Assembly: GCF_000143415.4 (NCBI RefSeq)
Contig: NW_003314449.1
Coordinates: forward strand, 1 to 64,000
DNA length: 64,000 nucleotides
From: Selaginella moellendorffii
Lineage: Eukaryota; Plantae; Lycopodiophyta
Reading direction: 5' to 3'
Below the pieces are notes generated by a model. The model had not been told where the DNA came from. It did not search any database and saw nothing but the letters and a program-made list of their open reading frames with translations. The position numbers and the translations under genes were made by a program. Positions 32,101-58,009 of this stretch are shown here, piece by piece (the stretch's first letter is position 1; the number at the start of each line of letters is the position of its first letter).

Positions 32101-32677
32101 ACTCGGCAGTATAAATAGGATAGACGAACAGGAAAACGGATCCCCATCCCACTCACTTGTACTCGCGCTGTACTGTGTTTTTCTGATATTCAATTGAGCT
32201 GTGAGATTGCTTCCTACACTGTGTCTGGGGATCAACATTGTGTCATGCATTCTTCTTTCTCTCTTCTTTATTCTACTTCTTTACTTCTCAAGCTGACCCT
32301 CTGTTTGTCATGTTTGTAGATTCTGTGGCCTGTGCCATCCTTACCCACCTTCGACTTGTTAGCGGCCTGTCCTTCATCTTTCAGGATAGTTGGTGTTTTC
32401 AACCAGCCAATTGGTCTCCCCTACATCCTATCATTGCTAGGGTTTCATCTCTAGCTGGCGACCAAGGCATTTCTGTTCATCTCACTATTCTCGTACCCCA
32501 TCTCATCTGTTTTCCCCTACCCACTATTCATCCATCCCTTTCTTACCATCCTATATTTTCTTAATCTTCCTGTCAGTGACATCACTCCTTTCCATGCCTT
32601 TGGTGAATAGGAATTTATTTCAATCATCACATGGTGACCACACTGGGATGGTTGTCATAGAATCTACGATTGCTTGA

Positions 32678-32701
32678 AAGCTCTATTTCGTTAAAGTGGG
32701 A
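32678..32701 (+). repeat. Left TIR (24 bp)
   Basis: aagctctatttcgttaaagtggga. Confidence 0.93.
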
Positions 32702-33293
32702 TTTATTCAGTAAAATGGGACTAGGTACAAATTTTCAAGTATTTGAAAATGACGTGAAATTATATGTTTTTTGTCCAGGGGCTAGACATATCTGGGGCAT
32801 GGTGACTAGTGCGGTGACTTTGTGTCCAGACTGAGTCCATCTGGTTGTATAATAAATCTCATTGTCAAGGTGAACAAGCCGAATCTGAAGCTAAAGAAGA
32901 GCGATGGCATGCGCGCACACACTATTTGTTTGTTCATTGAGCGTGTGGTGAGCTTTCCAAGATGAACGTCATTCCTATTATCCAGACATATAACTTAATG
33001 GTGAGAACATTTAGATATTATTCAATGTTATCTTTTTCTAACGAATCTAATTGTGAAGGTGTAGCAAGAGGCATTGCTAGTCTGGAGAAGTCATTTAACT
33101 CATTTGACCCTTAGTGTATTTTCATGAAACTAAATAACATTCATATTATTAAGGAATTTCTCTAGTACCTTTTTTTTACGACATAGAGGCTTGCATTTCT
33201 TTCAAAGGTGATTTAGTAAAAGGCCTTAGGGCACATGCCATTCTATTTCTCAGACCGGTATTAAGATATACTAGTGCAAAGGGCCACATGCCA

Positions 33294-36200
33294 TCACGCC
33301 TCCTCTGATTCAGATTCGGATTGTTCACCTTGAAATAAAATACATTAGAAACTTAGTAAAGGAATATCAATGAATCTCACCTTGAACCCGGGTTATGAAT
33401 GCTCTTGCTGCATCTCTTGCATGGTCTGGAAAGGTGATGGTGGCACTCTGCTTCCGCATCCAACCATGCACAACATTATCCACTGATATGCTCATGCTGG
33501 GATCCCTTGGATTCAGCACCCATCTCTTTTCTAGGCAATCCTTCGTATATCCAGAACTTGGCTTGAACCACTCCACAGTTACATTGAAGGAGTTAGTTTC
33601 CGCGTCCTCCTCTGCATCAGTGATGCAGCGCCCCACCCATATCATTTGTTTTTTATTACTGGGTCTGACAAGCACGACCATTCCTTTGCAGACCTGTACT
33701 GGATTGAATGCTGAATCCGGCTTCTTGTTCCTCGGCCCACAATAGTGATCCTCAACATCGTTATCTGTCACTGCATTTCCAGAGGACATTGTTCCGCTAC
33801 TATCTGGTGCTCTGGGTTCTAGCCAAAAGGACTCTTCCAATTCTTCATATACAACCGGCCCATTTTGGATAGCAGATATAATCTTCTCCCAGTATTCGAG
33901 CAAAGGCTTGCACCTCTTAAAATAGGATTCTCCACCAAACACCAACCCCCTCTTCCAGAAGGCAATATGCTGTCTAATCCCGGCCACTATACTTTCCTGG
34001 TCTTTGAGTCCATCCGGGTGCATCGGCCGTGGGGAACCCTGAGGAATCATAGGTTCCCCAGTTATGGGATCTCTCTTGAAGAGTTCAATGCCGTCCACTG
34101 GCAGCCACACTGTATCCCATTCTCTCATCTTGTACCTCATCACTGGAGCACCGTCACGCATGCTGAAATGAAACTGAAGAGGCTTGGAGTGGCCAATCAG
34201 CATTTTGGATCCGTCCCTGATGTAGCCTCTTACAAACCCCTTAAAGTCTGGAACCTCTGTCACAAGTGCAGCTTCAACAGTGCCTTTGATGCAATTTTGG
34301 AATTCATCGTAGAGTTGTGGGAGGGTGAGGACATTGGATCGCCGGAGGGACTCTGCCAGGTGACTGAACATGGCATCGACGTCTTCATGAGTGTGCCCAA
34401 CCATGAGAAAGCCAAGTGTAACCGTTTCAAATATGCCTTTGGCAACAAGCATCACCAAGTACGCGAAGACGTACATGTTTTTGTTCTCACTGCCAGCATT
34501 GTCTGTTTGGAGCAGAAGATGGGGTGGAAGGCCACATCGGCCGCAAGAACTTCCTTGAGATTCTGCTTCGTTTGGATGAGGCTGTGCATTCACCGGGCGA
34601 CCAGCCTCGTCGGAATGGCATGAGGCCTCACGTGATAACCCTACAATCTGACGGCCAAAATATTCACTGGGATGGCATGGGGCCCCACGCGATACTGCAA
34701 GCCTTTGCTCCTCCTCCAGCTGAACCCTGTATGGGGTTCGATCGACAAGGGCCTTATGCAAGGGTTGGCCGTTCAGCTCAGTCTGCGCACTTTGCAGTGA
34801 CCTTAAGTGTTTTGCTAGGGACGCAATCATCATGTTTGCACCCCCGCCACCCCATAGAGGTACAAAGAAGTTCCCATAGTTCTGGGCACCATGCCCATGA
34901 GCGATTATGCCAAACAGAGACACAGGCAGTTGCATGGATGAAGAGATTGCCTTGGGGGCAGGATTGAGTCGAGGTAAGCACGTCTTTTTCTGATCCATTT
35001 TGTCGTGGATGATGCAGAGGTAAGAGTCAGGTCTCTCCATGGAGAGAATCCTGTTATGATAATATGCAGTCCTGCAGCTTCTCTGCTTGATGTTGTGGTC
35101 GAGCCGCCTTCTAACCAACGTCTCTCGCTCTTGAGCGCTGCAAGAATTCTTCGACAAAGCCATTTTGATAGCAGTGCACTCGTCACACTTTGAAAAGCTG
35201 GAGTACTTTCCTATACTCACATCCCTGAACCTGTTGCTCCACAATCTACTAAATCTAGATTGGCTCAGCTTCCTGTAGCCATTACTCTGGAGTTCCCGAT
35301 TCACATCTTCCAATATGGCCCCCTTGGTATACATGGAAGGGAGAACTCGTTGGGTGTCTCGTGTTCCATCTTCCAAGAGGCGGGTTTTATGTGGTTGCTG
35401 CTCGCTACATGTCTCGACAAACCTCTTGAAGATTGCCTCTCCATATACAACATGACCCCTGGTTTTGTGCGTACCGTCGTTCCCATGGACTGCCTGTTGA
35501 ACCCTTTGTTCCTCGAACTCAGTTTTGATTCTGTAGAATGTGGTTCGAGGGACTCCATAAATGATTCTCCATGCCTTCATGCAGACCAAACCCCTCTGGA
35601 AGACCATGCCCCCCACCTGATGTTCTGAAGCATCAACAGATGACCGTAATGCCTCATACACAAAATTGCGAGCTGCCTTCCAGAACAATGTCTTGTATCT
35701 TGCTCTCTCCTCTTCAATAGCATCCCAATCAGCATGTTGACAGCACCTCCTCTTGCAACAAGCAACTGTCGAAACCATTCGAACCTCCATCGCCATTTTC
35801 TGCCTTTTCGGTTCGTTGCTCAGATCCCTTTGGCTGCGCTGTAGGAAGGTGTACTTTCTTTTCCCATGAAGAGATGTTCTGTCATCAGTTGTAGTGGTGT
35901 TTGATTGTGAATCCTTCACATTCTCAAACACTAAATGCCTCAATTTCCACCGCACAATGCTTCCAATAGTCAGACTGTTTTCTTCTGTGTCAACAACCTC
36001 TAAAATCGCAACTCCAATATCATCCCAGCCCAATTCTTGATTAGCAACTGCATCTCTTGGATCGACAACTGTGGCTAAGCCCTCAGCTACCACCTCCCCC
36101 TCGGGGTTGTTTAGAAACACCTTTGCCTGAATCCATGTAGCACGGTTCTTAAGATCCACGGAGGGAACATGCGTCGCACTTGCGCTGTCCCCAACATCTG

Positions 36201-36435
36201 CTTTCTTCTGCACATTTTTCAAGGCAACAACAACATTTACCCCGACGACCATCTCTCCTCGTTCAATAGCGACCACATTCCCATCGAAGACAGTCTCTAC
36301 TGATACAGCAGCATTGCCTTCCCCAAGCCTTTGACAGTGTATAACAAAGTTCCGATCCATAGACACAAGGGTCCCTTTTGCAACTCTCTTCCCACCATTC
36401 AAAATGTAAACCTTTTCCCCAACCCTGAAGGCCAT
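33294..36435 (-). CDS. Intact transposase of about 1030 aa (Sola-related / DUF7869-type DDD core), with two N-terminal Tnp1/En-Spm-like modules and a C-terminal SH3/BAH-like beta domain
   Basis: 1022-aa open ORF 33367-36435. Motifs CCKRRC, VCMKAWRIIYGV..HGN, FSKCDEC, IIHDKMDQ, LQTDNAGSENKN and FLMVGHTHEDVDAMFS. A probable terminal 52-nt intron (33380-33329) adds GEQSESESEEA*. Confidence 0.9.
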
Positions 36436-37730
36436 TCTGAAAGTGCAGAAAAGAAGTTAAGACCATACAAAAAATGATTGGAGAATGGCCTAAATCATAA
36501 CATACCAAACAACCTCAATAGCATGAGGCCACATGCCATTATTCAAACATGCTATTGACACCCACATGAAATTTCGCATTCACAAAATTGGCATGAGGCC
36601 TCATGCCATCTTGATATACACACAGCTGCAGGCAAGTAAAAACATACATGACAATACGCTAGCCATGAAATTGCAAGGGCCCAAGATGGCATGTGGCCTC
36701 ATGCCATTTCTAAATGTGGTCCTAAACCATTCCATGGTGAACATACCAGGAAGCACAAGTGCCGAATATCAAGAGGAAGCGGTAGCCACACCAAAGACAG
36801 TGCCGCTCGCAACACCGCAACTACTCGTAGCGCCGCTCACAACACCGCAACTGCTCGTAGCGCCGCTCGCACAAACTGCCACTCGCATAAACTGCCGCTC
36901 GCAATGGCGCTCGCAATGCCGCAACCGCTTGTAGACGCATAAACCACAGCTCACAACGCCGCTTACACAAGCAGCGCTCACTGCGCTCAGCGGAACCAAG
37001 AACACGGCACACAAAAATGATAGACCTAGGAATGAGTTCGAGAATTCAAAAATAACACACGCTTGAATGTCACATCAAATCCTCTGACAAACCAAATCTT
37101 ATGATTCCTCTGACAAATTTCAAACTGAGTAGCTTCTAGACTTTGCTGTCGGAGGTTGAACTTTGTCACATCATGTCCTTGCCTCGATCCAGCTGTGCCA
37201 TGTCAGTGATTCGAACTTTGCCATGCCATGTCAGCGATCCGCGCCAAGATTATTCGCTGTGTAAAGGAATAATTATGCTGTGTGTGTACGTCCATTTATG
37301 GCAATATAAGGCCACACGCCATTCAAAGAATAATGCTAGTCGAGCATTTTTTGGTGCATTTTTGGGTTCAAAATTGCATGAGCCCACACGCTATAAAGTT
37401 TACCTGTACCAAAAATAGAAACAGCTTTATTTACTTGGGAATTTAAGTGGTTGAGGCATTTTTAAACTTACAAACACATGCCCTACTTACATTCCTTTGG
37501 TTGCTTAAAATTCAAAAATATTATAAACCTTTTTTTTTGCATTTTCAATGTTTTCAATTATGGTTTTTGATTTTCGCAGGACCAGCCTAGTAATCTATTT
37601 GCATCCCGTCATGTTTATAGCTAGCTTTCGTTTGTCCCCTTCGCTGGCCTGAGATACATCTGCTCGGAATCTGCCTCTTACAGCATTTGCCCAGAAAGGG
37701 CATCTTTCTTCACGCAGCATTTGCCACATG

Positions 37731-37762
37731 TTTAGGGTTAGGGTTTAGGGTTTAGGGTTTAG
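37731..37762 (+). promoter_or_regulatory. Interstitial telomeric / telobox tract (TTTAGGG)~4 between the divergent genes; copy at 53838-53863
   Basis: tttagggttagggtttagggtttagggtttag. Confidence 0.85.
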
Positions 37763-39245
37763 CAATTCAGTAGCTTGATAAACATGCAAATACAGAACTT
37801 GATGCAAAATCCTTTGATATGTCACAATGCCCCTAGGACCATAAACACATTTCAATAGAGAGGGTCCTTTCATTTCATAACTCCTTACGTAGATCTTGGT
37901 GAAACCAGAGTTAGTGAAGTTGGTTTCTTGTGATCCCGCATCTGATTGTGATGTCCCTTTGCAGTGTCGATGGAAAGGTCAATGCACACCAAACTGTAGA
38001 ATCTTGGAGCAAAATAACGGTCGGATCTATGGCAAATGCCCCTGAAACATTGTAAGGCTCGTGTGGTCTCATGTGGTGTCCGATCGAGATGCTTCTTTGC
38101 AGGGTCATCAAGAAGGACATTGTATACCGTTCTGTAAAATATAGTTGCGATCTAACGGTTGGATCTCCAGGAAACTCAAAACAATCTCGCGCGTGTCAGA
38201 ATATTCTAGGAATATACTCCTATGTGCTCTTGAAAATGGCATGCGGCCCCACGCCATTCAAGAGATAATGCCAGATGACGCCGAGCATTTTTTGGTGCAT
38301 TTTTTGGGATCAAAATTGCATGAGCCCACACGCTTGAACGTCACATCAAATCCTCTGACAATTTATTTAGCTGAACATCTAGCATTTTTGGAAATACAAG
38401 ATGCTTTGGAATATCCAATCATGCATAATATAAATATAGCGAGGGTATTAAATGATATCCCAATCATGATCTTTCTTTTGGATTTCGCGTGCATGCAGTC
38501 CGAGGAATGATGACGTTGCGGATTTCTTTTGGATTTCACGCATGCATGCGCCGATCCAGAAATTAATGGTGGCGCCCAAGTCCAAGGAATGATGACATGG
38601 CGGGATTACCAACCGTCGTGACATTTCGCACGTGTGAGGTTAGGTTTTGCATTTTGCTTCGTACTCGCGCTCGCACACTCGCGCTCGCATCGCGCTCCCA
38701 CTCGCGCTCCCACTTCTCTACAGGTTTCTCGTGTGCATCGGCGTCCACTCGCGCTTGCATCACACTCGCGCTCGCATCGCGCTCGTGTGCATCGGCGTCC
38801 ATTTCAAGACACACCCAGTTTGTAACTTCGCCGCCAACTCCGCCGCCCACTCCGCCACCCACACGCAGCCCACTTGGCGTCCCGGGAGATTTCAGCGCCA
38901 CTCTCCAACTGTAAGTGGCAGAGTAGCCTTGCTGCTATGATCCGCTGCACACACAGTGCACATTCGCCAGCAAGTCCGGTTGTCACGCCTCCATTCGGCT
39001 TCAAATGGTAAGTCTTTAGGCCAAGTAGAAAATGGCATGAGGCTACATGCCATTCAGTAGCAACATTGGCATGCACCGATTGGGCTCTCGAGTGCAGTCC
39101 GGTTACAGATGGCGTGTAGCCTCACGCCATCTTAGGATGCAGCCTCAAGACATCTGATACAGTGGTGAATGGCGTGTGGCCTCACGTTATTTCCAGCTAC
39201 TAGCTTTTCATCTGTCAGCTCTAATTGTTGTGCATTTCTGAACAG

Positions 39246-42200
39246 GCAAGGAATTGCGTTCTTCTTCCAGCCACTGTCAATGTGGATGCAGAGAAGGGGG
39301 AGGAGCTCACCAGTTGGACTTTCGGGATGGAAGGCGAGGATCTGAGGCTGTACAACACAGATGGTGGGAGAAAAGAATGCATGGGGATCCTCATCCAAGT
39401 GACAGACACTCCATGCAGTTCCATGCAAGAATATGGACTGGCACTTTTGGTAGAGACAGCGTCTGCCTTCAAGATCCACCTTGCACATCCTAGCGGCTTC
39501 CCGGAGGGGGGCAGCGGCTATGAGGAATTCCTAGAGGGAGCTAGGGAGAGGTTGTCCAGGAGGCCCACAATTTCAAAGACGCTACGGGTCTATGAAGATC
39601 ACATGGAATCCACGGACCTCACCTACGGCGATGTTCAAAAACTATATTCCAACATTGAGCCGTTGAGAGTGACTCCAGTTCGCGAAGCAAAGGGGAAGGG
39701 GGTCGATCTGGAAACTACCTCGAAGCAGAAAAGGGTGGTCAAGCTCAAGCCGACGTCCGACTCTCCTGCTCCAAAAAAGAAGCTACTCAGTGATGCCATT
39801 GCCTCGGGTTCGAACACTACACCCACCAAAAAGAAGAGCCGCAAAGAGCAGAAAGAGCAAGAAGAGGCAGCAAAAATCGTCGCAGATAATAGTACTTGTT
39901 ACTATTCCAACAAAGTATATACAATCGACGTGAGCCGTATCGACATCCAAAGCAAATACAACCACAGGCTAGTATCTGATGAGTGGGTGGAGAAATTGAA
40001 GCAGAAGATGCTGGCAAGTCCAGTAACACCCGACATCGCAGACGTGATCCCCTACTACCAAAAAATGAAGGGCGAGATGAGGTTTCCAGACTTGATCAAT
40101 AGGAAGGTGTTGGACGATCAGAACATCCGGTTCTATGCCGTCTCCGGGCAGCATTCTAGCTTGGCGATGCAAGAGATAGTTGTGGATATTATGGTGGGCG
40201 AGGAGGTGAAGAAAGTCTTCAAGACAAGAGTTGTTCGCCTGATAAAAGGCAACTCGCCCCTCCGATCTATCATATACATCTCCCATGCGCAGAATGTCAA
40301 GCAAGAAACGTGCTACAAATCGGGTCTGCACGAGACATTGGCACGAACACGGAAGCTCTGGGTTCAACTGAAGAAGCCACAAAAACCAGGACAAGGACGT
40401 GCACTAGCAACTAGCGCCTGGCAGGTAAGCCTCGTTGTATGTGGCATAGCATGTGGCCTCACGCCATTTCCATTGCAGGAATTCTCGAGTCTTCTCTCGA
40501 AAACACTGGGGGTCAATGACACACTCAGCATCCATAACATTCTACTCGCGACAAAAGTTGTTTTTGACAAATGGGTAGATGTGCTGAGGAGGTACCATGA
40601 CGGGGAGTTGCCAAACTCAATGGGTGTGGAGGACGGCCGGAAGCCCAATGATTTGAAGCTCAACGCCTTGCATTTCTCGCGGTCTCTAGACGACGACGAC
40701 CTTCTGACAGTGGCTAATGCTCTTCTACGTGGTGAGGTAGTCTTCAACAAGACCAAAATGACTCCCGGCCATATTGTGACATACGAGGACTTGTGCACGA
40801 CTCTGAGAGCTCGTGCGCTATTGAAGGATTGGATCTTCGAGCAAGTGGCCGTGGAGAGGGTGAGCATCGACACCACGCAAGAGATGATGGAAGCGCTGGA
40901 GTTGTCAAATGAAGACATCGACGAGTACGTGAAGGGGGCCCCCAAGTTCATCGATCTGCTGCGGGATGCCACGAAAAGTAAAGCTGAGAAGTTGGATCAG
41001 TATCCAAATTTCATTAATATTGATGTCGACCGCCGGCTTTAGAAACAGCTCGACCCCGCAGCAGAGGCCTATCGAGAACCTTACCGGGTATACTTGAATT
41101 CAGATGAGGATCAAAGGTGGAGGAGCATCGTTTCCCGCGGAGATGAGCAGGTCAAGAACATCTTTTGTGTGATGGACTTCACAAACGAGGAGATCACTCA
41201 TGCAGACGAAGTCAGCTCCATCATTGACTTAATGGTGGGACTTGCGGAGGTGGAATCTTCAGTCCACTATATGATCTACGACTCCGAATCCTATCACAAG
41301 TTCTGGAAGGCCTTGAACGAGGTGAAGGCTCGGTTGAAAGGCAAGGAGATGCGGGAGATCCATGGGATAATGGCTAAGAAGAAGATACCGACGAATGTCC
41401 GCATCTTCACACTCGCCCTTGTTATTGGTCCTGCAGCAGAGTGGGACTGGAGTGACTTCCCAGCTTCGTTCGACAAGGCCAATCGAATTGATTTGAGGGA
41501 GGTCAATTTACCCGTGCCTGAGGAACTGAAGACGGCTATGGAGCTTTCGAATCCAAAGAAAGCTCCAGGTGCAGCATGGGAAATGCTCAGCTGGGTCTTC
41601 AACGCAATAGCGGGTGGGTCACCTGCTTCCGACTCCAAGGGCAAATGCATTGTCGAGTACAACTGCGGCGGACTATTCTTTCGAGCCGCACTACTCAAGG
41701 GTGTCCCGTGTGTTGCGGTGACAAACTCCATTGAAGAGGTGACTTCAATGGAGCATATAATTACAGTTGCCAAAGAAAAACAGTATCTTCTCTGCGAACC
41801 TGGTGAGTATGCACTTTAAGTTTAAATGTTATCTCACAAGCTCTGTATGCAGGAGCGTGGCCACCCCCAGATGCTGAAATGGCGTTAACAGCTACTATTG
41901 AAGATACCCATGTTGGGCCGAGCTCACAACCTGCACAAGGTAAGGTCACATGCATATGGATCCGCCAGTGGACTCTACTTGGCTGCAAGAGTCATCAGAG
42001 CTGGTGGAGGCTACTATCCATATCAACGCCAAGCAAGCTGACCACGCTCCACTTGATGCTGCCCATACCACTGAGTCAATCTTGTCCACGTATCCAACTG
42101 ACGGTGACCAGGCGCCATTGGACCCACATGAGGCCGCCCCAGCCGCCGAGCCGGTCGTATCCTCATTTCCAACGGACTCAACGTGTGCCCAATCGTTTGA

Positions 42201-43400
42201 CTACGCGCCGTTGGAACCTCCCTACACCGCCCCTGCTGCCTGTTCGGTCATGTCCACTTTGCCAACGGAGGCACCAGCTGAAATGGCGTGTGATCACACG
42301 CCATCGGAACCACCCCATGCCACTGTTGAGCCAGTTGTACCAGAGTCTACAGCTGAAATGGCATGTGCCCACACGCCATCGGATGCGATTGACCCCACAT
42401 TGCAGAGGAGAGTATTTCCGCCCTTCACGTTTCCTCGACCAAAACCCTCTCAACGACCATCGGGAGCAACATTCGCTAATATTGTAGATGGTAAAATTGA
42501 CTTGTACCATTTTTTATGCTGACGCATTTCATTTCAGAGTCACGGCGAAGGTACTGTATCGTTTTTGATCTGAACGGTGTCCTTTTCTCCCATGAGCGTG
42601 GCTCGTCCTCGAATGTCATTGCACCCTCCAAAGCCTGCGGTCGCAAGTTGGTCAAAAGAGACAGATTCACATTAATCACACAGGAGAAACTGCGGGATCT
42701 AATAATGACCATGCGACACTTAAAACAGAGGGCCGGGTTCAATTTGCAATTGGGAGTTTGGACATCCATGATGCGCCACAATGCATTAACATTGCTACAG
42801 ATGATGCACGATCAGACGCGAGTAATATTACCATTTGACTTTCTCCTAACGCAGGAGGATTGCTTGACTATGGTCCATGTGAGGGGTAGCAAGCCCATCT
42901 TCATCAAGCCAGAGGCTGTAGTGATGAACCGGACTGCTAGCTCAAGTGAAATCCTCATCATCGATGACTCGCCGATTAAAACTGCAGCGAACACGCACAC
43001 ATATGCAGTGCACCCCATCTCTTGCAGTATGGAAACTAGGGAGAAGAAACCGTATGTTCTGGGGGACCTTGCAAAACGGCTTGGAGCGATGGTGATAGAG
43101 AACCGGCCAGTCCAGGAGGTGGCTGCAGAAATCAACCAAATGGCAGATGGAACGGTATATCAGAAGCCATTTGATCGGACAGACACCAGTCATCATTTAT
43201 GGCATGTATATTGTCTAGCCAAGCACTATCCGCATCTCCATAATCTGCTCAACCGGATGGGTTCTTCGACCACTGAACATGAGCGTGGACGTATTAGAGA
43301 AGAGATGGCATTACTATTGGGTTTAAATCCTGATAGTGTGGAGAGTGATGAAATTCCAAGATTATTGTATAGGCGTTGGAGGCAAAAAATAACAGTCTGA
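39246..43400 (+). pseudogene. Spliced transposon cargo gene: ParB/Srx-like, degenerate N4/N6 DNA-methyltransferase-like, low-complexity linker and FCP1/NIF-like HAD phosphatase domains; one premature stop (41040) and a 1.24-kb deletion
   Basis: ORFs 39225-41042 and 41094-41819 share a frame (TAG at 41040 is CAG in copy 2). Motifs IDVSRI..NHRLVSDEWV..FYAVSGQHS, IFCVMDFT..GKCIVEYNCGG..AALLKG, and FDLNGVL..VWTSM..IIDDSPIK. Short GT-AG introns at about 40424-40478, 41803-41852 and 42491-42537. True start codon not determined. Confidence 0.75.
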
Positions 43401-43818
43401 GATGGCATGTATTTATTTAAAAATGTAACTTATTATGGTATGGGGTTCCATGCCATTGTATTAATATTAAAAGACAATTCTTTGAGAGGATTTGCATTAT
43501 ACTAGAAGTGTTACAGCATGTTATTGGAAGTCTACGAAGTTGTTTTATTAATAATGGGAAAGTAAAGATTGAATGGGGACTTGGGCTCCACCTAGACTCG
43601 GAGCAACTGAGCCAATATTAAAAGGATGGAAAGAAATTGGACGACGATGACAAGGAGAAGAGAGAGGTGAAGCAGTGGCAGGGGGAGGAGAAGTGATTGA
43701 GTAGACATTTCCTTGTTTAAAATAAAATGGCATGTGCCTCAATGCAGTTGAATTTTGTTATATTTATATACTATATAAAGGTTTGGAAACCTTATTTTAC
43801 AAGTGGGATAATGACAAT

Positions 43819-43842
43819 TCCCACTTTAACGAAATAGAGCTT
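43819..43842 (-). repeat. Right TIR (24 bp)
   Basis: tcccactttaacgaaatagagctt followed by ttga. Confidence 0.93.
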
Positions 43843-44229
43843 TTGAGAGTTCATTCCCTATTTCTTCTCATTTTTTGTTCTTTCCAGATTTTTCCCCATT
43901 TTTCCTATTCTATTGAGTTTTTCATCATTTTCTTGATAGTTGTAAAAAATCTCCTAAACCAGCGTGAGATTAGCTGATCAGCAGAGTAGAGAGTACCACT
44001 CAACGGAGTTATGAGGAGTGTGGGGCTACCCTATCAGACGAATTTTTATTGTGGAAAATGCCATTCTAATGGGACAAAGGAGTTCTGTAGACGGCTGGAG
44101 GATTACCTCGAGAGAAAACCGAGAGGACAAGAGTGGAATGGAAGACCATTCTTGTGCAACAACTGTGTCAAAGGAATAGCCACCTTCGCAAACTTATGCT
44201 GGAAATGTTGGTAGTAATTAGCCATTCTA

Positions 44230-46400: not shown

Positions 46401-46997
46401 AAACAAAAGTTGATGGTCAAGGACTTTCATGCTTATGCATGAAACCATGTTACATTGGTTAGATGACTTGCTAAGCAAGAGTGACAAGTTAGAGGAACAA
46501 ATCCCCTAGTTGAAGGTGCTAACTTCAAAAGGGGTGGCCCATGGGGCCAAGCATGAAGCTCTATTTCGTTAAAATGGGAATTGTCATTATCCCACTTGTA
46601 AAATAAGGTTTCCAAACCTTTATATAGTATATAAATATAACAAAATTCAACTGTATTGATTCACATGCCATTTTATTTTAAACAAGGAAATGTCTACTCA
46701 ATCACTTCTCCTCCCCCTGCCACTGCTTCACCTCTCTCTTCTCCTTGTCATCATTGTCCAATTTCTTTCCATCCTTTTAATATTGGCTCAGTTGCTCCGA
46801 GTCTAGGTGGAGCCCAAGTCCCCATTCAATCTTTACTTTCCCCTTATTAATAAAACAACTTCGTAGACTCCCAATAACATGCTATAACACTTCTAGTATA
46901 ATGTAAATCCTCTCAAAGAATTGTCTTTTAATATTAATACAATGGCATGGAACCCCATACCATAATAAGTTACATTTTTAAATAAATACATGCCATC

Positions 46998-49900
46998 TCA
47001 GACTGTTATTTTTTGCCTCCAACGCCTATACAATAATCTTGGAATTTCATCACTCTCCACACTATCAGGATTTAAACCCAATAGTAATGCCATCTCTTCT
47101 CTAATACGTCCACACTCATGTTCAGTGGTCGAAAAACCTATCCGGTTGAGCAGATTATGGAGATGCGGATAGTGCTTAGCTAGACAATATACATGCCATA
47201 AATGATGACTAGTGTCTGTCCGATCAAATGGCTTCTGATATACCGTTCCATCTGCCATTTGGTTGATTTCTGCAGCCACCTCCTGGACTGGCCGATTCTC
47301 TATCACCATCTCTCCAAGCCGTTTTGCAAGGTCCCCCAGAACATACGGTTTCTTCTCCCTAGTTTCCATACTACAAGAGATGGGTGCACTGCATATGTGT
47401 GCATGTTCGCTGCAGTTTTAATCGGCAAGTCATCGATGATGAGGATTTCACTTGAGCTAGCAGTCCGGTTCATCACTACAGCCTCTGGCTTGACAAAGAT
47501 GGGCTTGCTACCCCTCACATAGACCATAGTCAAGCAATCCTCCTGCATTAGGAGAAAGTCAAATGGTAATATTACTCGCGTCTGATCGTACATCATCTGT
47601 AGCAACGTTAATGCATTGTGGCGCATCATGGATGTCCAAACTCCCAATTGCAAATTGAACCCAGCCCTCTGTTTTAAGTGTCGCATGGTCATTATTAGAT
47701 CCCACAGTTTCTCCCGTGTGATTAATGTGAATCTGTCTCTTTTGACCAACTTGCGACCGCAGGCTTTGGAGGGTGCAGTGACATTCGAGGACGAGCCACG
47801 CTCATGGGAGAAAAGGACACCGTTCAGATCAAAAACGATACAGTACCTTCGCCGTGACTCTGAAATGGAATGCGTCAGCATAAAAATGGTACAAGTCAAT
47901 TTTACCATCTACAATATTAGCGAATGGTGCTCCCGATGGTCGTTGAGAGGGTTTTGGTCGAGGAAACGTGAAGGGCGGAAATACTCTCCTCTGCAATGTG
48001 GGGTCAATCGCATCCGATGGCGTGTGGGCACATGCCATTTCAGCTGTAGACTCTGGTACAACTGGCTCAACAGTGGCATGGGGTGGTTCCAATGGCGTGT
48101 GATCACACGCCATTTCAGCTAGTGCCTCCGTTGGCAAAGTGGACATGACCGAACAGGCAGTAGGGGCGGTGTAGGGAGGTTTCAACGGCGCGTATCAGAC
48201 GATTGGGCACACGTTGAGTCCGTTGGAAATGAGGATACGACCGGCTCAGTGGCTGGGGCGGCCTCATGCGGGTCCAATGGCGCCTGGTCACCGTCAGTTG
48301 GATACGTGGACAAGACTGACTCAGTGGTATGGGCAGCATCAAGTGGAGCGTGGTCAGCTTGCTTGGCGTTGATATAGATAGTAGCCTCCACCAGCTCTGA
48401 TGACTCTTGCAGCCAAGTAGAGTCCACTGGCGGATCCATATGCATGTCCAAATATCTCCCTTCGATTGAGATGGTATCCTCCCGTGCTACTAAAAACAAA
48501 CTCATTAGCACATTGAATCCACTATACTGTATTTACCATCAACTGCTATTGAGGAACTAGGACCGATATCACTTGGGCACACTGCTGATTCTGAAGGATT
48601 GGACATACGTTTCGACCCTTGCTTGGCACTATCCTTCCTCGACACTAAAGGCTAGAGTTTGTAAATTCAACTGAATAATCTCTACTTACCATTTGCTCTG
48701 CGACCTACATGGACAATGTTAGAAATGGTAAAAGGTTAGGAATGGATGTATTATTATTTACCTGATGGTTTGTCTTGTATGACCTTCCTCCGCTACTCTT
48801 TGGCCCCAAAGAGCAGCGGAGGAAGGTCATATAAGACAAACCATCAGGTAAATAATACCACCTCATGATCGTCACCATTGTGAGGACCATCCAAGTCCTC
48901 TTTGTCCTCCTTTTCTTCGTCCTCCTCTTCTTTGTCCTCCTCTTCGTCCTTCTGCTCTTCCTGCTCATTATCTTTCTCTGGCTCCTCATCCCCCTCTTGC
49001 ATTTCTTCCATAGGCTGCTCAGGTTGGATGGCTTGTTCTTCCAGGACCATCTTGGGAAAATCATCTGGCCGAGTCTCCATCTCAAAATACAAGACATCCA
49101 TAGCCTGTTTTAGTGCGTGACTTAGGACCGTATCCTCACCCGACTGTCTTAACATGGTTTCTGCACGTTCTTGCACCCTTCGAAGACGACGAGATGAGTA
49201 AAACGTGGCCCTGACTTGAAAAGCATCCCTCATCCATTGTACCTCTCCATTGAGATTGGGGAAGGGGAGTCCGCCATAGGAATCTGAGTCAGGAGGTGGT
49301 GACTGGCTGCTTTCACTCAGCCCTTGATCTGCAATGAATGGCATGAGCACACACGCCATAACCGCGAGGCATTACCTATCATCTTTTCGTTGCCCTTCTT
49401 CCTTTTCGAATCAACCGCCTCTGATCCCGACGACTGTCCAACATGTTTTTGCTTTTTATGACCACTATCAGTTTGAGCTTGGCTGGTGCTTGCCTGTTTT
49501 TCTTTTCAAGAAGTGTCTCCTGCAAGGAATGGCATGAGACCACACGCCATTGCAAATATAATTTGTACCTCCTTTTTTCCTATTGCTTGTCTGTTTGTCC
49601 TTCTTCGACGCGCCACCAGTGCGCTTTTCAGTCCTCGTGTCTGAATATTCACAACGATCTATAATCAAAATGGCGTGAGGCCTCACGTGACCTTACCTTG
49701 TGCAGGTTGTGAGCTCGGCCCAACATGGGTATCTTCAACAGTAGCTGTTAACGCCATTTCAGCATCTGGGGGTGGCCACGCTCCTGCATACAGAGCTTGT
49801 GAGATAACATTTAAACTTAAAGTGCGTACTCACTAGGTTCGCAGAGAAGATACTGTTTTTCTTTGGCAACTGTAATTATATGCTCTATTGAAGTCACCTC

Positions 49901-52390
49901 TTCAATGGAGTTTGTCACCACAACACACGGGACACCCTTGAGTAGTGCGGCTCGAAAGAATAGTCCGCCGCAGTTGTACTCAACAACGCATTTGCCCTTG
50001 GAGTCGGAAGCAGGTGACCCACCCGCTATTGCGTTGAAGACCCAGCTGAGCATTTCCCATGCTGCACCTGGAGCTTTCTTTGGATTCGAAAGCTCCATAG
50101 CCATCTTTAGTTCCTCAGGCACGGGTAAATTGACCTCCCTCGGATCAATTCGATTGGCCTTGTCGAACAAAGCTGGGAAGTCACTCCAGTCCCACTCTGC
50201 TGCAGGACCAATAACAAGGGCGAGTGTGAAGATGCGGACATTCGTCGGTATCTTCTTCTTAGCCATTATCCCATGGATCTCCCGCATCTCCTTGCCTTTC
50301 AATCGAGCCTTCACCTCGTTCAAGGCCTTCCAGAAATTGTGATAGGATTCGGAGTCGTAGATCATATAGTGGACTGAAGATTCCACCTCCGCAAGTCCCA
50401 CCATTAAGTCAATGATGGAGCTGACTTCGTCTGCATGAGTGATCTCCTCGTTTGTGAAGTCCATCACACAAAAGATGTTCTTGACCTGCTCATCTCTGCG
50501 GGAAATGATGCTCCTCCACCTTTGATCCTCATCCGAATTCATGTATACCTGGTAAGGTTCTCGATAGGCCTCTGCTACGGGGTCGAGCTGTTTCTGAAGC
50601 CGGCGGTCGACATCCCTCTTAATGAAATTTGGATACTGATCCAACTTCTCAGCTTTACTTTTCGTGGCATCCCGCAGCAGATCGATGAACTTGGGGGCCC
50701 CCTTCACATACTCGTCGATGTCTTCATTTGACAAATCCAGCGCTTCCATCATCTCTTACGTGGTGTCGATGCTCACCCTCTCCACGGCCACTTGCTCAAA
50801 GATCCAATCCTTCAATAGCGCACGAGCTCTCAAAGTCGTGCACAAGTCCTCGTATGTCACAATATGGCCGGGAGTCATTTTGGTCTTGTTGAAGACTACC
50901 TCACCACGTAGAAGAGCATTAGCCACTGTCAGAAGGTCGTCGTCGTCTAGAGACCGCGAGAAACGCAAGGCATTGAGCTTCAAATCATTGGGCTTCCGGC
51001 CATCCTCCACACCCATTGAGTTTAGTAACTCTCTGTCATGGTATCTCCTCAGCACATCTACCCATTTGTCAAAAACAACTTTTGTCGTGAGTAGAATGTT
51101 ATGGATGCTGAGTGTGTCATTGACCCCCAGTGTTTTCGAGAGAAGACTCGAGAATTCTTGCAATGGAAATGGCATGAGGCCACATGCTATGCAACATGCA
51201 ACGAGGCTTACCTGCCAGGCGCTAGTTGCTAGTGCACGTCTTTGTCCTGGTTTTTGTGGCTTCTTCAGTTGAACCCAGAGCTTCCGTGTTCGTGCCAATG
51301 TCTAGTGCAGACCCGATTTGTAGCACATTTCTTGCTTGACATTCTGCGTGTGGGAGATGTATATGATAGATCGGAGGGGTGAGTTGCCTTTTATCAGGCG
51401 GACAACTCTTGTCTTGAAGACTTTCTTCACCTCATCGCCCATCATAATATCCACAACTATCTCTTGCATCGCCAAGCTAGAATGCTACCCGGAGACGGCA
51501 TAGAACCGGATGTTCTGATCTTCCAACACCTTCCTATTGATCAAGTCTGGAAACCTCATCTCGCCCTTCATTGTTCGGTAGTAGGGGATCACGTCTACGA
51601 TGTCGGGTGTTATTGGACTTGCCAGCATCTTCTGCTTCAGTTTCTCCACCCACTCATCAGATACTAGCCTATGGTTGTATTTGCTTTGGATGTCGATACG
51701 GCTCACATCAATTGTATATACTTTGTTGGAATAGTAACAAGTACTATTATCTGCGATGATTTTTGCTGCCTCTTCTTGCTCTTTCTGCTCTTTGCGGCTC
51801 TTCTTTTTGGTGGGTGTAGTGTTCGAACCCGAGGCAATGGCATCACTGAGTAGCTTATTTTTTGGAGCAGGAGAGTCGGACGTTGGCTTGAGCTTGACCA
51901 CTCTTTTCTGCTTCTGGGTAGTTTCCAGATCGACCCCCTTCCCCTTCGCTTCGCGAACTGGAGGCACTCTCAACGGCTCAATGTTGGAATATAGTTTTTG
52001 AACATCGCCGTAGGTGAGGTCCGTGGATTCCATGTGATCTTCATAAACCCGCAACGTTTTTGAAATTGTGGGCCTCCTGGACAACCTCTCCCTAGCTCCC
52101 TCTAGGAATTCCTCATAGCCGCTGCCCCCTTCCGGGAAGCCGCTAGGATGTGCAAGGTGGATCTTGAAGGCAGACGCTGTCTCTACCACAAGTGCCAGTC
52201 CATATTCTTGCATGGAACTGCATGGAGTATCTGTCACTTGGATGAGGATCCCCGTGCATTCTTTTCTCCCACCATCTGTGTTGTACAGCCTTAGATCCTC
52301 GCCTTCCATCCCAAAAGTCCAACTGGTGAGCTCCTCCCCCTTCTCTGCATCCACATTGATAGTGGCTGTAAGAAGAACGCAATTCCTCGC
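46998..52390 (-). pseudogene. Cargo gene copy 2, retaining extra Lys-rich and acidic exons
   Basis: ORFs 51485-52411, 50756-51298, 49817-50752, 48844-49359, 48182-48511, 47303-47908 and 46998-47369. Its stops are at different sites from those of copy 1. Confidence 0.85.
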
Positions 52391-57833: not shown

Positions 57834-58009
57834 GGTTTGGTTTGCATGAAGGCATGGAGAATCATTTATGGAGTTCCTTGAACCACATTCTACAGAATCA
57901 AAACTGAGTTTGAGGAACAAAGGGTTCAACAGGCAGTCCATGGGAACGACGGTACTCACAGGGTTAGAAGGTGGCTTGACCACAACATCGAGCAGAGAAG
58001 GTAGGTAGC

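What the first reader, a model, noticed from the sequence alone, without database searches (positions are those of the whole stretch)
32678..43842. Two-gene Sola-like DNA transposon with a ParB / methyltransferase-like / phosphatase cargo gene and its own palindromic sites: candidate new transposon self-regulation system
Seen: perfect 24-bp TIRs, a 4-bp TSD (TTGA), an intact transposase, a divergent multi-exon cargo gene, about 20 copies of a 22-bp palindrome found only inside the element, and a second copy confirming the terminus. Known: 4-bp TSDs with a D-D-D core (HDKMD / QTDN..NKN / GHTHEDVD) fit Sola-type transposases. ParB proteins load on palindromic parS sites. Arabidopsis VANDAL elements encode VANC proteins that bind short motifs in their own non-coding regions to counter silencing. 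Inference: this element encodes a trans-acting chromatin or transcription factor plus matching cis sites, a functional analogue of VANC built from different, bacterial-type domains.
Basis: partly seen in the sequence, partly recalled or inferred. Interest (0 to 1): 0.93.

Follow-up and report, generated by a model that had tools for sequence, protein, structure and literature searches.

The report
Sola1 transposon with ParB-like gene
This is a real 11-kb Sola1-type DNA transposon from a plant-like genome; its second gene (ParB-like, methyltransferase-like and phosphatase-like parts) is a kind already reported in algal transposons, but its private, position-conserved palindromes make the proposed self-recognition by the transposon directly testable.

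Summary
The element spans 32678-43842, with perfect 24-bp TIRs and a TTGA duplication. It has a full-length 1022-aa transposase ORF and a divergent second gene. Seventeen copies of a 22-bp palindrome occur only inside the element, and an inverted, damaged second copy lies at 46556-58000.

The transposase is Sola1-type: its core is 52% identical to the published Ectocarpus Sola1-1 transposase. The second gene folds as ParB/Srx, then a beta-class DNA-methyltransferase-like domain lacking the DPPY motif. Short introns link it to a NIF/HAD phosphatase-like domain with DxN instead of DxD.

It is not a chance capture. Two elements in the liverwort Riccia sorocarpa, with proteins about 23-27% identical, share the layout, 4-bp duplications and a related terminal motif. 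They carry a different palindrome at matching positions.

It is not a new kind of system. A Sola1 element with an opposite-strand ParB-methyltransferase gene, and the idea that such proteins bind their own transposon, were published in 2025.

Both cargo copies here are broken. Palindrome binding and any anti-silencing role remain untested. Verdict: new variant of a known kind, moderate interest.

The parts
32674..32677 (.). Left target-site duplication TTGA
   Evidence: Read directly. It is identical to 43843-43846.
32678..32701 (+). Left terminal inverted repeat, 24 bp, AAGCTCTATTTCGTTAAAGTGGGA
   Evidence: Perfect match to the right TIR, with 0 expected by chance.
32704..32720 (+). Subterminal motif TATTCAGTAAAATGGGA. 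It matches the Riccia TIR core at all 17 positions, allowing A or G at one, and is a candidate transposase-binding motif.
   Evidence: Binding is inferred, not tested.
33367..36435 (-). Sola1-type transposase ORF, 1022 aa. It has an N-terminal CCx3CC and HTH-like region. Catalytic candidates are D477/D480 (HDKMD), D644 (QTDN) and D684/D686 (HTHEDVD). Palindromes at 34615 and 34672 lie in its variable linker.
   Evidence: PF25273 DUF7869 at E 1e-41. Full-length alignment to P0002-P0004 with invariant columns. 52% identity to the Sola1-1_Ec32 core.
36518..36707 (.). Three palindromes (36518, 36588, 36686), 83-251 bp upstream of the transposase ATG
37373..38257 (.). Two palindromes (37373, 38236) in the central intergenic region, which also holds an internal direct duplication (37056-37392 versus 38245-38361)
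39032..39190 (.). Three palindromes (39032, 39109, 39169) upstream of the cargo ORF
39225..40424 (+). Cargo gene, first open stretch. It holds an N-terminal conserved region and the ParB/Srx-fold 'SGQHS' domain (about 39825-40400). The first ATG is at 39327 and the true start is undetermined.
   Evidence: Homologue alignment A1. AlphaFold2 model with pLDDT 79.8. Foldseek hits to ParB/Noc/Srx/KorB.
40425..40478 (+). Putative 54-nt in-frame intron (GTAAG...CAG) holding palindrome 40446-40467
   Evidence: Sequence. It equals the 18-aa gap against Riccia P0027. Riccia elements have palindromes at the same place.
40479..41039 (+). Cargo gene, conserved helical middle domain of unknown fold. By its position it is a candidate DNA-binding part.
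   Evidence: Alignment A4. A sequence profile of it found no relative among solved structures.
41040..41042 (+). In-frame stop codon in copy 1. Copy 2 has Gln here.
41043..41802 (+). Beta-class N6A/N4C DNA-methyltransferase-like domain. The motif IV position reads MDFTN, not DPPY. The SAM-loop region reads VEYNCGG.
   Evidence: Foldseek top 40 are all beta-class DNA methyltransferases, from a model with pLDDT 50.5. Homologues hit PF01555 weakly. Alignment A2.
41803..41852 (+). Putative 50-nt intron (GTGAGT...CAG), followed by exon 41853-41939 and a donor at 41940
   Evidence: The frame continues into the AGAWPPPDAE... ORF.
41948..41952 (.). Junction of a 1.2-kb internal deletion relative to copy 2 (48447-49684). 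The lost part holds three more palindromes and an acidic ORF.
41944..42490 (+). Pro-rich open frame with a 75-bp tandem duplication carrying palindromes 42283 and 42358
42491..42537 (+). Putative 47-nt intron (GTAAAA...CAG) joining the Pro-rich frame in frame to the NIF-like exon
   Evidence: This is an inference from splice signals and phase.
42538..43400 (+). NIF/FCP1-like HAD domain exon. Motif I reads FDLNGVLF (DxN instead of DxD).
   Evidence: PF03031 at E 4.9e-5, 23.5 bits against a cut-off of 21.8. The relative P0030 shares DMNGVLF. Riccia L009 has NIF at the same place at E 7e-11.
43435..43748 (.). Right subterminal palindromes (43435, and a degenerate one at 43727)
32904..33241 (.). 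Left subterminal degenerate palindromes (32904, 33220), located 3' of the transposase gene
43819..43842 (-). Right terminal inverted repeat
43843..43846 (.). Right target-site duplication TTGA
46556..58000 (-). Second, inverted copy, 96-97.6% identical. Its cargo end is complete and includes the 1.2 kb missing from copy 1. The transposase is cut after about 280 codons by a 1.8-kb insert at 56006-57834, much of it minisatellite (56238-56829). Remnants run to 58000, and Gypsy sequence follows.

Best explanation
The feature is an 11,165-bp DNA transposon of the Sola1 superfamily in a plant-like, probably bryophyte-type, genome.

Shown here:
- The element has TIRs, a 4-bp duplication and a full-length Sola1 transposase ORF.
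- It carries a divergently oriented second gene with this order: N-terminal region, ParB/Srx-fold domain, helical middle domain, beta-class DNA-methyltransferase-like domain, linker, NIF/HAD-like domain.
- This second gene is an ancestral part of this transposon lineage, not a captured host gene.
- Each lineage carries its own 20-24-bp palindrome. It is repeated 9-27 times in each stretch of element sequence examined and lies at matching positions: upstream of each gene, in the transposase linker, between the ParB-like and middle domains, between the methyltransferase-like and NIF-like parts, and 3' of the transposase gene. The window element also has them at its right subterminus.

Inferred:
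- The transposase recognises the terminal motif, which is conserved between lineages.
- The fast-changing palindromes are the binding or loading sites of a dimer of the ParB-like accessory protein. This would resemble the plasmid RK2 KorB protein with its dispersed palindromic OB operators, or ParB with parS.
- From these sites the protein would control the two divergent promoters. It might also coat and mark the element's DNA or chromatin, helping expression or transposition.
- In this lineage the canonical catalytic or nucleotide-binding motifs are altered in all three domains: GERR becomes GQHS, DPPY becomes DFTN, and DxD becomes DxN. The protein more likely acts as a binder or scaffold than as an active methylase or phosphatase.
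- The two copies in this window are decaying. Only copy 1 keeps an intact transposase ORF.
For: Identity as Sola1:
- TIRs and duplication.
- DUF7869 at E 1e-41.
- 52% identity, E 6e-17, to the Sola1-1_Ec32 catalytic core. That published element also has a 4-bp duplication biased to end in A and termini starting with AA.

Accessory-gene folds:
- The ParB/Srx model has pLDDT 79.8, and every leading Foldseek match is ParB, Noc, Srx, KorB or PadC, with the best at E 6e-5.
- The methyltransferase-like model's top 40 matches are all beta-class N6A/N4C methyltransferases, with the best at E 6e-6. PF01555 hits are weak in Riccia homologues.
- NIF PF03031 is found in the window and at E 7e-11 at the same position in Riccia L009.

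Conserved unit:
- Riccia L004 and L009 have transposase remnants on the minus strand and ParB-like, middle, methyltransferase-like and NIF-like parts on the plus strand.
- They have 4-bp duplications (CTAA, ATAT), and their TIR core equals window 32704-32720.
- Ectocarpus Sola1-1 has an opposite-strand ParB/methyltransferase gene.

Private palindromes:
- Window: 29 hits against 0.12 expected.
- L004: 23 hits against 0.01 expected.
- L009: 27 matches to the same core.
- L007: 9 hits against 0 expected.
- L002: 3 sites upstream of a transposase gene.
- The transposase-less Selaginella relative has none.
- Positions are syntenic between the window and Riccia.
- The window and L007 palindromes share the 8-mer CCTCACGC.

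Other:
- dN/dS of the cargo ORF between the two copies is 0.37, against 0.65 for a non-coding control frame.
Against: - No binding data exist. Nothing here says which element protein, if any, binds the palindromes.
- The ParB/Srx fold is the nucleotide-binding module, not the DNA reader. No helix-turn-helix was demonstrated, and the middle domain matched nothing.
- The phosphate-loop arginines of ParB are absent (SGQHS).
- The methyltransferase-like model has low confidence (pLDDT 50.5), and the window protein has no Pfam methyltransferase hit.
- The transposase has its own Cys-rich and HTH-like N-terminus and could bind the palindromes.
- Palindromes are not more conserved than the rest between the two copies: 5 substitutions in 286 bp against 2.7% overall.
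- Both cargo copies here are broken, so nothing can be said about activity in this genome.
- The introns and the link of NIF to the same transcript rest on splice signals only.
- Sola1 membership rests on one literature-labelled sequence. Repbase was not available.
Confidence: 0.55

Rival explanations
1. The palindromes are transposase-binding sites, either internal or subterminal enhancers of synapsis. The ParB/methyltransferase/NIF-like protein would have an unrelated job, for example a leftover of a phage-type ParB-methylase module acting on DNA generally.
For: The transposase has a conserved CCx3CC motif and an HTH-like N-terminal region. Contig L002 shows three palindromes just upstream of a transposase gene with no cargo gene visible in its 4.4 kb. 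Subterminal repeats bound by element proteins are common in DNA transposons (general knowledge).
Against: The palindrome is unrelated to the TIR. The terminal motif is conserved between the window and Riccia while the palindromes differ completely. That pattern fits two separate recognition systems. Palindromes lie all along the element, not mainly at the ends. L007 keeps 9 palindromes around a cargo gene with no transposase within 10 kb.
Confidence: 0.2
2. The accessory protein would be a VANC-like anti-silencing factor that binds the palindromes and removes or blocks repressive marks on its own element.
For: The gene and its candidate sites are in the same element, and each lineage has its own palindrome sequence, as VANC motifs are lineage-specific in VANDAL elements (general knowledge). 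Chromatin- and DNA-modification-type domains are present. The same idea is voiced in the literature for algal elements.
Against: No homology to VANC is known or claimed, and none was tested here. The element is not of the Mutator superfamily. The catalytic motifs of the methyltransferase-like and HAD-like domains are altered in this element. The two copies differ mainly by transitions, 36% of substitutions in CpG context, as expected of methylated, silenced DNA. No methylation or expression data exist.
Confidence: 0.12
3. The palindromes are not protein-recognition sites of the element. They would be hairpin-forming or host-factor sites, such as promoter elements, splicing or termination signals, or small-RNA sources, that spread within the element by duplication or conversion.
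For: Some lie in duplicated blocks: the 75-bp tandem at 42268-42383 and the 37.3/38.2-kb duplication. One lies in a putative intron. Some centres resemble GGNCCCAC-type plant promoter motifs (recalled from memory, not tested).
Against: Four lineages have unrelated palindrome sequences at matching positions. Host-factor sites would be expected to stay the same. No copy lies outside the elements in 64 kb.
Confidence: 0.1
4. The second gene is a chance capture of a host or bacterial gene by one element, in the manner of Pack-type cargo.
For: The domains are of bacterial or phage type.
Against: The same multi-domain gene, orientation and order occur in both window copies and in two Riccia sorocarpa elements with about 23-27% protein identity. 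By published description it also occurs in Ectocarpus Sola1-1.
Confidence: 0.02

Closest known systems
Sola1-1_Ec32, a giant Sola1 transposon of the brown alga Ectocarpus (Genome Biol 2025, PMC12477816)
   Same: The transposase core is homologous (52% identity over 50 aa). Both have a 4-bp duplication ending in A and termini starting with AA. Both carry a second gene on the opposite strand encoding a ParB-like domain plus an N6A/N4C-type DNA methyltransferase domain. The authors propose that the protein binds and modifies its own transposon.
   Different: The Ectocarpus element is 21.5 kb with 282-bp imperfect TIRs. No palindrome family and no NIF-like domain were reported, and its methyltransferase is described as predicted active. 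The window element is 11.2 kb with 24-bp TIRs, a methyltransferase-like domain without DPPY, an added NIF/HAD-like domain and 17 dispersed palindromes.
Plavaka accessory gene PAG3 in red algae (Petroll et al. 2025, bioRxiv 10.1101/2025.02.11.637652)
   Same: It is an accessory protein with an N-terminal ParB-like domain encoded by a DNA transposon. Arrays of inverted repeats lie in the same element, with the same self-binding hypothesis.
   Different: It belongs to a different superfamily (Plavaka/CMC). Its partner domain is a 2OG oxygenase, not methyltransferase-like plus HAD-like. Its repeats form tandem arrays next to the gene rather than sites spread along the element.
KorB with its OB operators on plasmid RK2, and ParB with parS in general
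   Same: KorB has the ParB-family fold and was among the Foldseek matches. One element-encoded protein has a set of palindromic sites spread over the replicon, many near promoters. Specificity is private to each replicon lineage.
   Different: These are bacterial proteins with a proven HTH, a CTP-binding GERR-type loop and a clamp mechanism. Here the arginines are missing, no HTH is shown and the host is a eukaryote. This is an analogy of mechanism, not membership.
Phage and prophage ParB-N6_N4 methyltransferase fusion proteins (PNAS 2025, PMC12704722; Iyer et al. 2016, PMC4738411)
   Same: They share the domain order, ParB-fold followed by a beta-class (PF01555-type) methyltransferase, and are the likely evolutionary source.
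   Different: The prokaryotic versions keep their catalytic motifs and have no NIF domain. They are not embedded in a cut-and-paste transposon.
Two-gene plant DNA transposons with a site-binding accessory protein: En/Spm TnpA, PIF/Harbinger Myb-like protein, VANDAL VANC
   Same: The transposase is paired with a second element-encoded protein that recognises short repeated motifs inside its own element.
   Different: The transposases and accessory proteins are unrelated. Their motifs are mostly subterminal (TnpA, Myb-like) or short non-palindromic repeats (VANC).

Membership tests
Sola1 superfamily of DNA transposons | Transposase homologous to Sola1 DDD transposases | tested here: met
   The window transposase at aa 641-690 is 52% identical (E 6e-17) to the catalytic core of Sola1-1_Ec32. 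That sequence was classified by its authors by best blastp to Repbase Sola1-1_PPa. Invariant D477/D480, D644 and D684/D686 are seen across four homologues.
Sola1 superfamily of DNA transposons | 4-bp target-site duplication | tested here: met
   TTGA flanks the window element. The related Riccia elements have ATAT and CTAA.
Sola1 superfamily of DNA transposons | Terminal inverted repeats with group-typical termini | tested here: inconclusive
   Perfect 24-bp TIRs are present. They start AAGCT, against AACCG in Ectocarpus Sola1-1. No Repbase Sola1 termini were available for comparison.
Sola1 superfamily of DNA transposons | Placement inside Sola1, not Sola2 or Sola3, in a transposase phylogeny | not testable with these tools
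   Repbase and Dfam sequences are not held. Only one labelled Sola1 and one Sola2 protein were seen in a paper supplement.
ParB/Srx (ParB-CTPase) fold proteins | ParB/Srx three-dimensional fold | tested here: met
   The AlphaFold2 model has pLDDT 79.8. Foldseek against PDB gives Noc at E 6e-5. ParB, Srx, PadC and KorB follow at probability 0.92-1.0 (TM-score up to 0.58 when normalised by target length).
ParB/Srx (ParB-CTPase) fold proteins | Sequence-level match (Pfam ParBc, or PDB ParB by HMM) | tested here: not met
   No Pfam or NCBIfam hit was found. The profile of 16 homologues finds no ParB in PDB sequences.
ParB/Srx (ParB-CTPase) fold proteins | Phosphate-binding loop with conserved arginine(s) (GERR / GxxR) | tested here: not met
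   The family motif at the strand-Gly-helix position is SGQHS, with Q and H invariant and no Arg. It is closest to the DGQHR variant, by recalled knowledge.
ParB/Srx (ParB-CTPase) fold proteins | Adjacent helix-turn-helix that reads a palindromic site | tested here: inconclusive
   A conserved helical middle domain follows. Its sequence profile matched no relevant solved structure, and its members have no relevant Pfam hit.
Beta-class N6A/N4C DNA methyltransferases (Pfam PF01555) | Methyltransferase fold with beta-class motif order | tested here: met
   The Foldseek top 40 are all beta-class enzymes (CcrM at E 6e-6, TTHA0409, M.BceJIV, RsrI, PvuII). Caveat: the model pLDDT is only 50.5.
Beta-class N6A/N4C DNA methyltransferases (Pfam PF01555) | Pfam score above the gathering threshold | tested here: not met
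   The window protein has no hit. The Riccia homologues score 17.6 and 19.4 bits against a cut-off of 26.7.
Beta-class N6A/N4C DNA methyltransferases (Pfam PF01555) | Catalytic motif IV (D/N/S)PP(Y/F/W) | tested here: not met
   At the end of the first long strand the window has MDFTN, Selaginella has ADLRR and Riccia P0020 has ADFAR.
Beta-class N6A/N4C DNA methyltransferases (Pfam PF01555) | SAM-binding motif I (FxGxG) | tested here: inconclusive
   The window has VEYNCGG, Selaginella VEYGCGG and Riccia LDFFSGG. The acidic residue and two glycines are kept and the third glycine is lost.
FCP1/SCP (NIF) HAD phosphatases (Pfam PF03031) | Pfam score above the gathering threshold | tested here: met
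   The window scores 23.5 bits against 21.8. Riccia L009 scores 42.5 bits.
FCP1/SCP (NIF) HAD phosphatases (Pfam PF03031) | Catalytic DxDx(T/V) motif | tested here: not met
   Both window copies read FDLNGVLF, with Asn in place of the second Asp. The relative P0030 reads FDMNGVLF. Riccia L009 keeps LDVD, in a different frame segment.
VANDAL/VANC anti-silencing system | Mutator-superfamily element encoding a VANC-family protein | tested here: not met
   The transposase is Sola1-type. The accessory domains are ParB-like, methyltransferase-like and NIF-like. Only a functional analogy was ever claimed.
VANDAL/VANC anti-silencing system | Sequence-specific binding to own motifs with loss of DNA methylation | not testable with these tools
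   This needs binding and methylome experiments.

The most novel reading that the evidence does not exclude
Each lineage of these plant Sola1 transposons would carry a private recognition code. The code pairs a ParB-fold accessory protein with its own 20-24-bp palindrome, kept at the same positions along the element, even inside introns and coding linkers, while its sequence turns over. This would be a eukaryotic counterpart of plasmid ParB-parS or KorB-OB systems. The element would use it to regulate, mark or assemble only itself, and the code would diverge to avoid cross-talk between lineages or with the host.
Probability: 0.35. Interest if true: 0.8.

Novelty: new variant of a known kind. 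Interest (0 to 1): 0.55.

Why it matters
ParB-domain accessory genes in eukaryotic transposons have been noted only in passing, in algae, and no target site has been defined for them. This work adds three things to that picture:
- The gene is a conserved, ancestral part of a Sola1 lineage in land plants.
- It is a three-part protein that includes a NIF/HAD-like domain.
- Every lineage examined has its own palindrome at matching positions, while the terminal motif stays conserved.

Together these give a concrete protein-site pair to test by EMSA or DAP-seq, and natural specificity variants to swap. If binding is confirmed, it would show a plasmid-style self-recognition module working in eukaryotic chromatin. 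It would also be a new way for a transposon to control itself. If binding is not confirmed, the element remains an ordinary, decaying Sola1 copy.

Tried and rejected
- A word-based homologue search with the 605-aa cargo ORF found nothing.
- phmmer of the three cargo pieces against PDB sequences found nothing relevant.
- Profiles of the ParB-like domain and of the middle domain against PDB sequences gave only spurious hits.
- NCBIfam gave nothing for any element protein.
- Rfam at gathering thresholds found nothing in the window.
- No paper mentions DUF7869. Bao et al. 2009 and Yuan & Wessler 2011 are not held, so Sola motifs could not be checked against the original descriptions. One literature search was wasted on an ambiguous term.
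- A search for an empty insertion site within the window failed.
- An exact-sequence look-up of the NIF ORF in public assemblies failed.
- A candidate 20-bp inverted repeat in L004 (108/16305) was rejected as the element end. It has no matching duplication, and the L004/L009 comparison places the ends elsewhere.
- Hits P0008, P0010 and P0016 of the exhaustive search were set aside as low-complexity or RTX-repeat artefacts.
- The test for extra conservation of palindromes between the two copies had too little power: 5 substitutions in 286 bp.
- Pairwise scores could not say whether the window cargo is closer to the Riccia lineage that shares its half-site.

Full report

Yes. The sequence AAGCTCTATTTCGTTAAAGTGGGA occurs perfectly at 32678-32701 (+) and 43819-43842 (-). 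It occurs with one mismatch at 46556-46579, and no match is expected by chance. TTGA lies directly outside both ends, so the element is 11,165 bp.

The minus strand holds a 1022-aa ORF at 33367-36435. The motif ATGGCRYG-N6-CRYGCCAT, with up to 2 mismatches, occurs 29 times in the 64-kb window against 0.12 expected. All hits fall within 32904-43456 or 46942-55076. Two more degenerate copies bring copy 1 to 17. The consensus is the perfect palindrome aATGGCRTGwGGCCwCAYGCCATt.

A second copy lies inverted at 46556-58000 and is 96-97.6% identical. A third, internally deleted copy from a public read assembly (L001) ends at exactly the same base next to different flanking DNA. A fourth transposase copy, 97% identical, is in UniParc.

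**2. State of the two copies**

Copy 1 keeps a transposase ORF that aligns end to end with 1060-1144-aa homologues. Its second gene is damaged in two ways:
- It has an in-frame stop at 41040-41042, where copy 2 reads Gln.
- It lacks 1.2 kb that copy 2 keeps at 48447-49684. That segment carries three more palindromes, so it is genuine element sequence.

Copy 2 has other stops and a frameshift in the second gene. Its transposase is cut after about 280 codons by a 1.8-kb insert that is largely minisatellite, followed by short remnants and a Gypsy element.

The copies differ at 2.7% of aligned sites. Of these differences, 81% are transitions and 36% are transitions in CpG context. That is the usual decay pattern of methylated repeats. 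The window is not human: it holds Ty3/Gypsy elements, and the closest relatives of the cargo are plant proteins.

**3. The transposase**

Pfam gives DUF7869 at E 1e-41. No paper mentions that name.

A curated Ectocarpus repeat library in the supplement of PMC12477816 contains the protein Sola1-1_Ec32. Its authors classified it by best blastp hit to Repbase Sola1-1_PPa. They describe the element as having a 4-bp duplication biased towards ending in A and AACCG...CGGTT termini. Its catalytic core, VQVDN..ENKN..TVTL.FMMVGHTH..ID..FS, is 52% identical to window transposase residues 641-690 at E 6e-17.

A phylogeny against Repbase could not be made.

**4. The second gene**

The region 39225-41816 is one reading frame of 864 codons, broken in copy 1 only by the stop at 41040. 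Sequence searches against Pfam, NCBIfam and PDB find nothing. An exhaustive HMMER search found 25 weak relatives at E 1e-9 to 1e-3. These share a conserved block with an invariant SGQHS-type motif.

- **ParB-like domain.** An AlphaFold2 model of this block has pLDDT 79.8. Its Foldseek matches are Noc, ParB, sulfiredoxin, PadC and KorB (best E 6e-5, probability about 1). The ParB/Srx fold is therefore supported. The motif sits at the strand-Gly-helix position of the ParB GERR loop but has no arginine.
- **Methyltransferase-like domain.** The next 258 residues gave only a low-confidence model (pLDDT 50.5). Even so, its 40 best Foldseek matches are all beta-class N6-adenine/N4-cytosine DNA methyltransferases, with CcrM at E 6e-6. 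Two Riccia homologues give weak PF01555 hits. The NPKKAP...VEYNCGG stretch resembles, by eye against the recalled consensus, the HPxxKP...DPFxGSG region of that class. The catalytic (D/N/S)PP(Y/F/W) motif is not present. The window reads MDFTN, Selaginella reads ADLRR and Riccia reads ADFAR.
- **NIF-like domain.** An ORF at 42501-43400 hits the NIF/FCP1 phosphatase family just above threshold. Its motif reads DLNGV rather than DxDxT. A relative in a compact algal-like genome shares this trait.

**5. Gene structure**

Three short intervals have canonical GT...AG ends and keep the frames consistent:
- 40425-40478 is 54 nt and in frame. It matches exactly an 18-residue gap against the Riccia protein.
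- 41803-41852 is 50 nt.
- 42491-42537 is 47 nt. It joins the Pro-rich frame 41944-42490 in phase to the NIF-like exon.

This supports a multi-exon gene and makes it likely that the NIF-like part belongs to the same protein. There is no RNA evidence, and the true start codon is unknown.

**6. Not a chance capture**

Two hits of the exhaustive search are annotated proteins of the liverwort Riccia sorocarpa, and one is from Selaginella moellendorffii.

In Riccia loci L004 and L009 the same layout is found:
- A transposase homologue lies on the minus strand. It is 27% identical to the window transposase over its N-terminal half in L004. L009 shows only fragments in several frames, and the catalytic core is missing from both copies.
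- The ParB-like, middle and methyltransferase-like parts lie in the same order on the plus strand.
- In L009 a NIF domain follows at E 7e-11.

Comparing the two Riccia copies fixes their ends at L009 324-17119 and L004 334-16001, with 4-bp duplications ATAT and CTAA. Their TIR core TATTCAGTAAAATAGGA recurs as TATTCAGTAAAATGGGA at window 32704-32720, just inside the left TIR.

The cargo proteins are only about 23% identical. The two-gene unit is therefore old and conserved. The Selaginella relative lies among ordinary host genes. It lacks most of the ParB-like domain, any transposase and any palindrome family, so it is a relic or a domesticated fragment.

**7. The palindromes across lineages**

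Each lineage has its own palindrome:

| Locus | Palindrome | Hits | Expected by chance |
|---|---|---|---|
| Window | ATGGCRTGWGGCCWCAYGCCAT | 29 | 0.12 |
| L004 (Riccia) | CATGRGGACGCGTCCYCATG | 23 | 0.01 |
| L009 (Riccia) | same core as L004 | 27 | not computed |
| L007 (second Riccia cargo lineage) | AACCTCAYGC-N4-GCRTGAGGTT | 9 | 0 |
| L002 (transposase contig) | AGGCTCAAACTCAAGTTTGAGCCT | 3 sites upstream of the ORF | 0 |

The positions correspond between the window and Riccia:
- A cluster lies upstream of the transposase start.
- A cluster lies upstream of the cargo gene.
- Copies lie in or next to the variable linker between the first and second catalytic Asp of the transposase.
- Copies lie between the ParB-like and middle domains, which in the window is the 54-nt intron.
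- Copies lie between the methyltransferase-like and NIF-like parts.
- Copies lie 3' of the transposase gene.

The window and L007 palindromes share the 8-mer CCTCACGC but with the arms in opposite order. By my rough estimate the chance of this is about 4e-4.

In short, the palindrome sequence turns over while its positions are kept, and the terminal motif stays the same. This argues for two recognition systems in the element. It is my main reason to assign the palindromes to the accessory protein rather than to the transposase. This is an inference.

**8. What is already known**

The Ectocarpus paper describes, in Sola1-1_Ec32, a gene on the strand opposite the transposase. [quoted passage not shown] The Bostrychia preprint describes Plavaka accessory gene PAG3, which pairs a ParB-like domain with a 2OG oxygenase. 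It has tandem arrays of inverted repeats next to it, and the authors raise the same idea. ParB-fold/N6_N4-methyltransferase fusions are common in phages.

As far as I could find, the following points are not in those papers:
- the land-plant occurrence;
- the NIF-like third domain;
- the altered motifs;
- the dispersed, lineage-private, position-conserved palindromes;
- the conserved terminal motif.

The Ectocarpus paper mentions no palindromes.

**9. Mechanism and confidence**

| Claim | Confidence |
|---|---|
| It is a Sola1 element whose second gene is an ancestral ParB-like/methyltransferase-like/NIF-like accessory gene | about 0.85 |
| The accessory protein binds the palindromes in a KorB/ParB-like manner and thereby controls the two divergent genes or marks the element | about 0.45 |
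| It specifically counters silencing like VANC | about 0.1-0.15 |

Several points limit these claims:
- There are no binding data and no demonstrated HTH.
- The loop arginines are missing.
- The methyltransferase model has low confidence.
- The transposase has a DNA-binding-like N-terminus of its own.
- Both cargo copies here are broken.
- A weak sign of past constraint exists: dN/dS between copies is 0.37 for the cargo ORF, against 0.65 for a non-coding control frame.

**10. Verdict**

This is a new variant of a known kind with moderate interest. Its value lies in a well-defined, testable protein-site pair with natural specificity variants.

Noticed in passing
L006:10001-11425 (Selaginella moellendorffii GL377575.1; proteins EFJ30523.1 / XP_024528744.1, second haplotype EFJ23012.1): This is a relative of the cargo protein that keeps only the middle and methyltransferase-like parts. 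It sits among ordinary host genes (ArfGap, VQ, SCAR) with no transposase and no palindrome family. It may be a domesticated or relic transposon gene.
   Followed up: partly
window 36686-36707 etc. versus L007:502-525 etc.: The window palindrome (GCGTGAGG.CCTCACGC) and the palindrome of a second Riccia cargo lineage (CCTCACGC-N4-GCGTGAGG) share the 8-mer CCTCACGC, but with the arms in opposite order (everted versus inverted).
   Followed up: partly
window 40425-40478: A 54-nt in-frame putative intron consists largely of one palindrome copy. Riccia elements have their own palindromes at the same point of the gene, between the ParB-like and middle domains.
   Followed up: partly
window 32704-32720; L009:331-347; L001:2174-2190: The subterminal motif TATTCAGTAAAATGGGA at the window element's left end matches the Riccia TIR core at all 17 positions, allowing A or G at one. 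It is absent from the right end of copy 1.
   Followed up: partly
L002:254-920: A 34%-identical Sola1 transposase contig from a metagenome assembly has three copies of yet another 24-bp palindrome (AGGCTCAAACTCAAGTTTGAGCCT), 200-850 bp upstream of the ORF.
   Followed up: partly
window 56006-57834: Copy 2's transposase is interrupted by a GC-rich insert. It holds a 12/35/93-bp minisatellite (56238-56662) and a CGAGAC hexamer array (56666-56829), which create long artificial ORFs on both strands.
   Followed up: partly
window 157-705 (-) and 11284-11832 (+); gap 3646-3745: Two nearly identical 182-aa ORFs (1 aa difference) lie in inverted orientation about 10.6 kb apart, around a 100-N assembly gap. 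They have no Pfam hit. This is either a large inverted duplication or an assembly artefact.
   Followed up: no
window 25510-30036 (+): A Ty3/Gypsy polyprotein ORF of 1227 aa looks intact (gag, protease, RT, RNase H, integrase zinc domain). A 275-aa ORF continuing the integrase follows. Further Gypsy fragments lie at 44378-44815 (-), 58052-60521 (+) and 61270-61923 (-).
   Followed up: no
L008:2146-2793 (P0030): The only relative found for the NIF-like domain is a 215-aa protein in a very gene-dense, apparently intron-poor eukaryotic contig. It shares the unusual DxN (FDMNGVLF) motif.
   Followed up: no
L004:3183-5168 and L009:3771-6899: Both Riccia copies lack the transposase catalytic core (profile positions about 582-768), although they keep the cargo gene and palindromes. 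They look like non-autonomous derivatives.
   Followed up: partly
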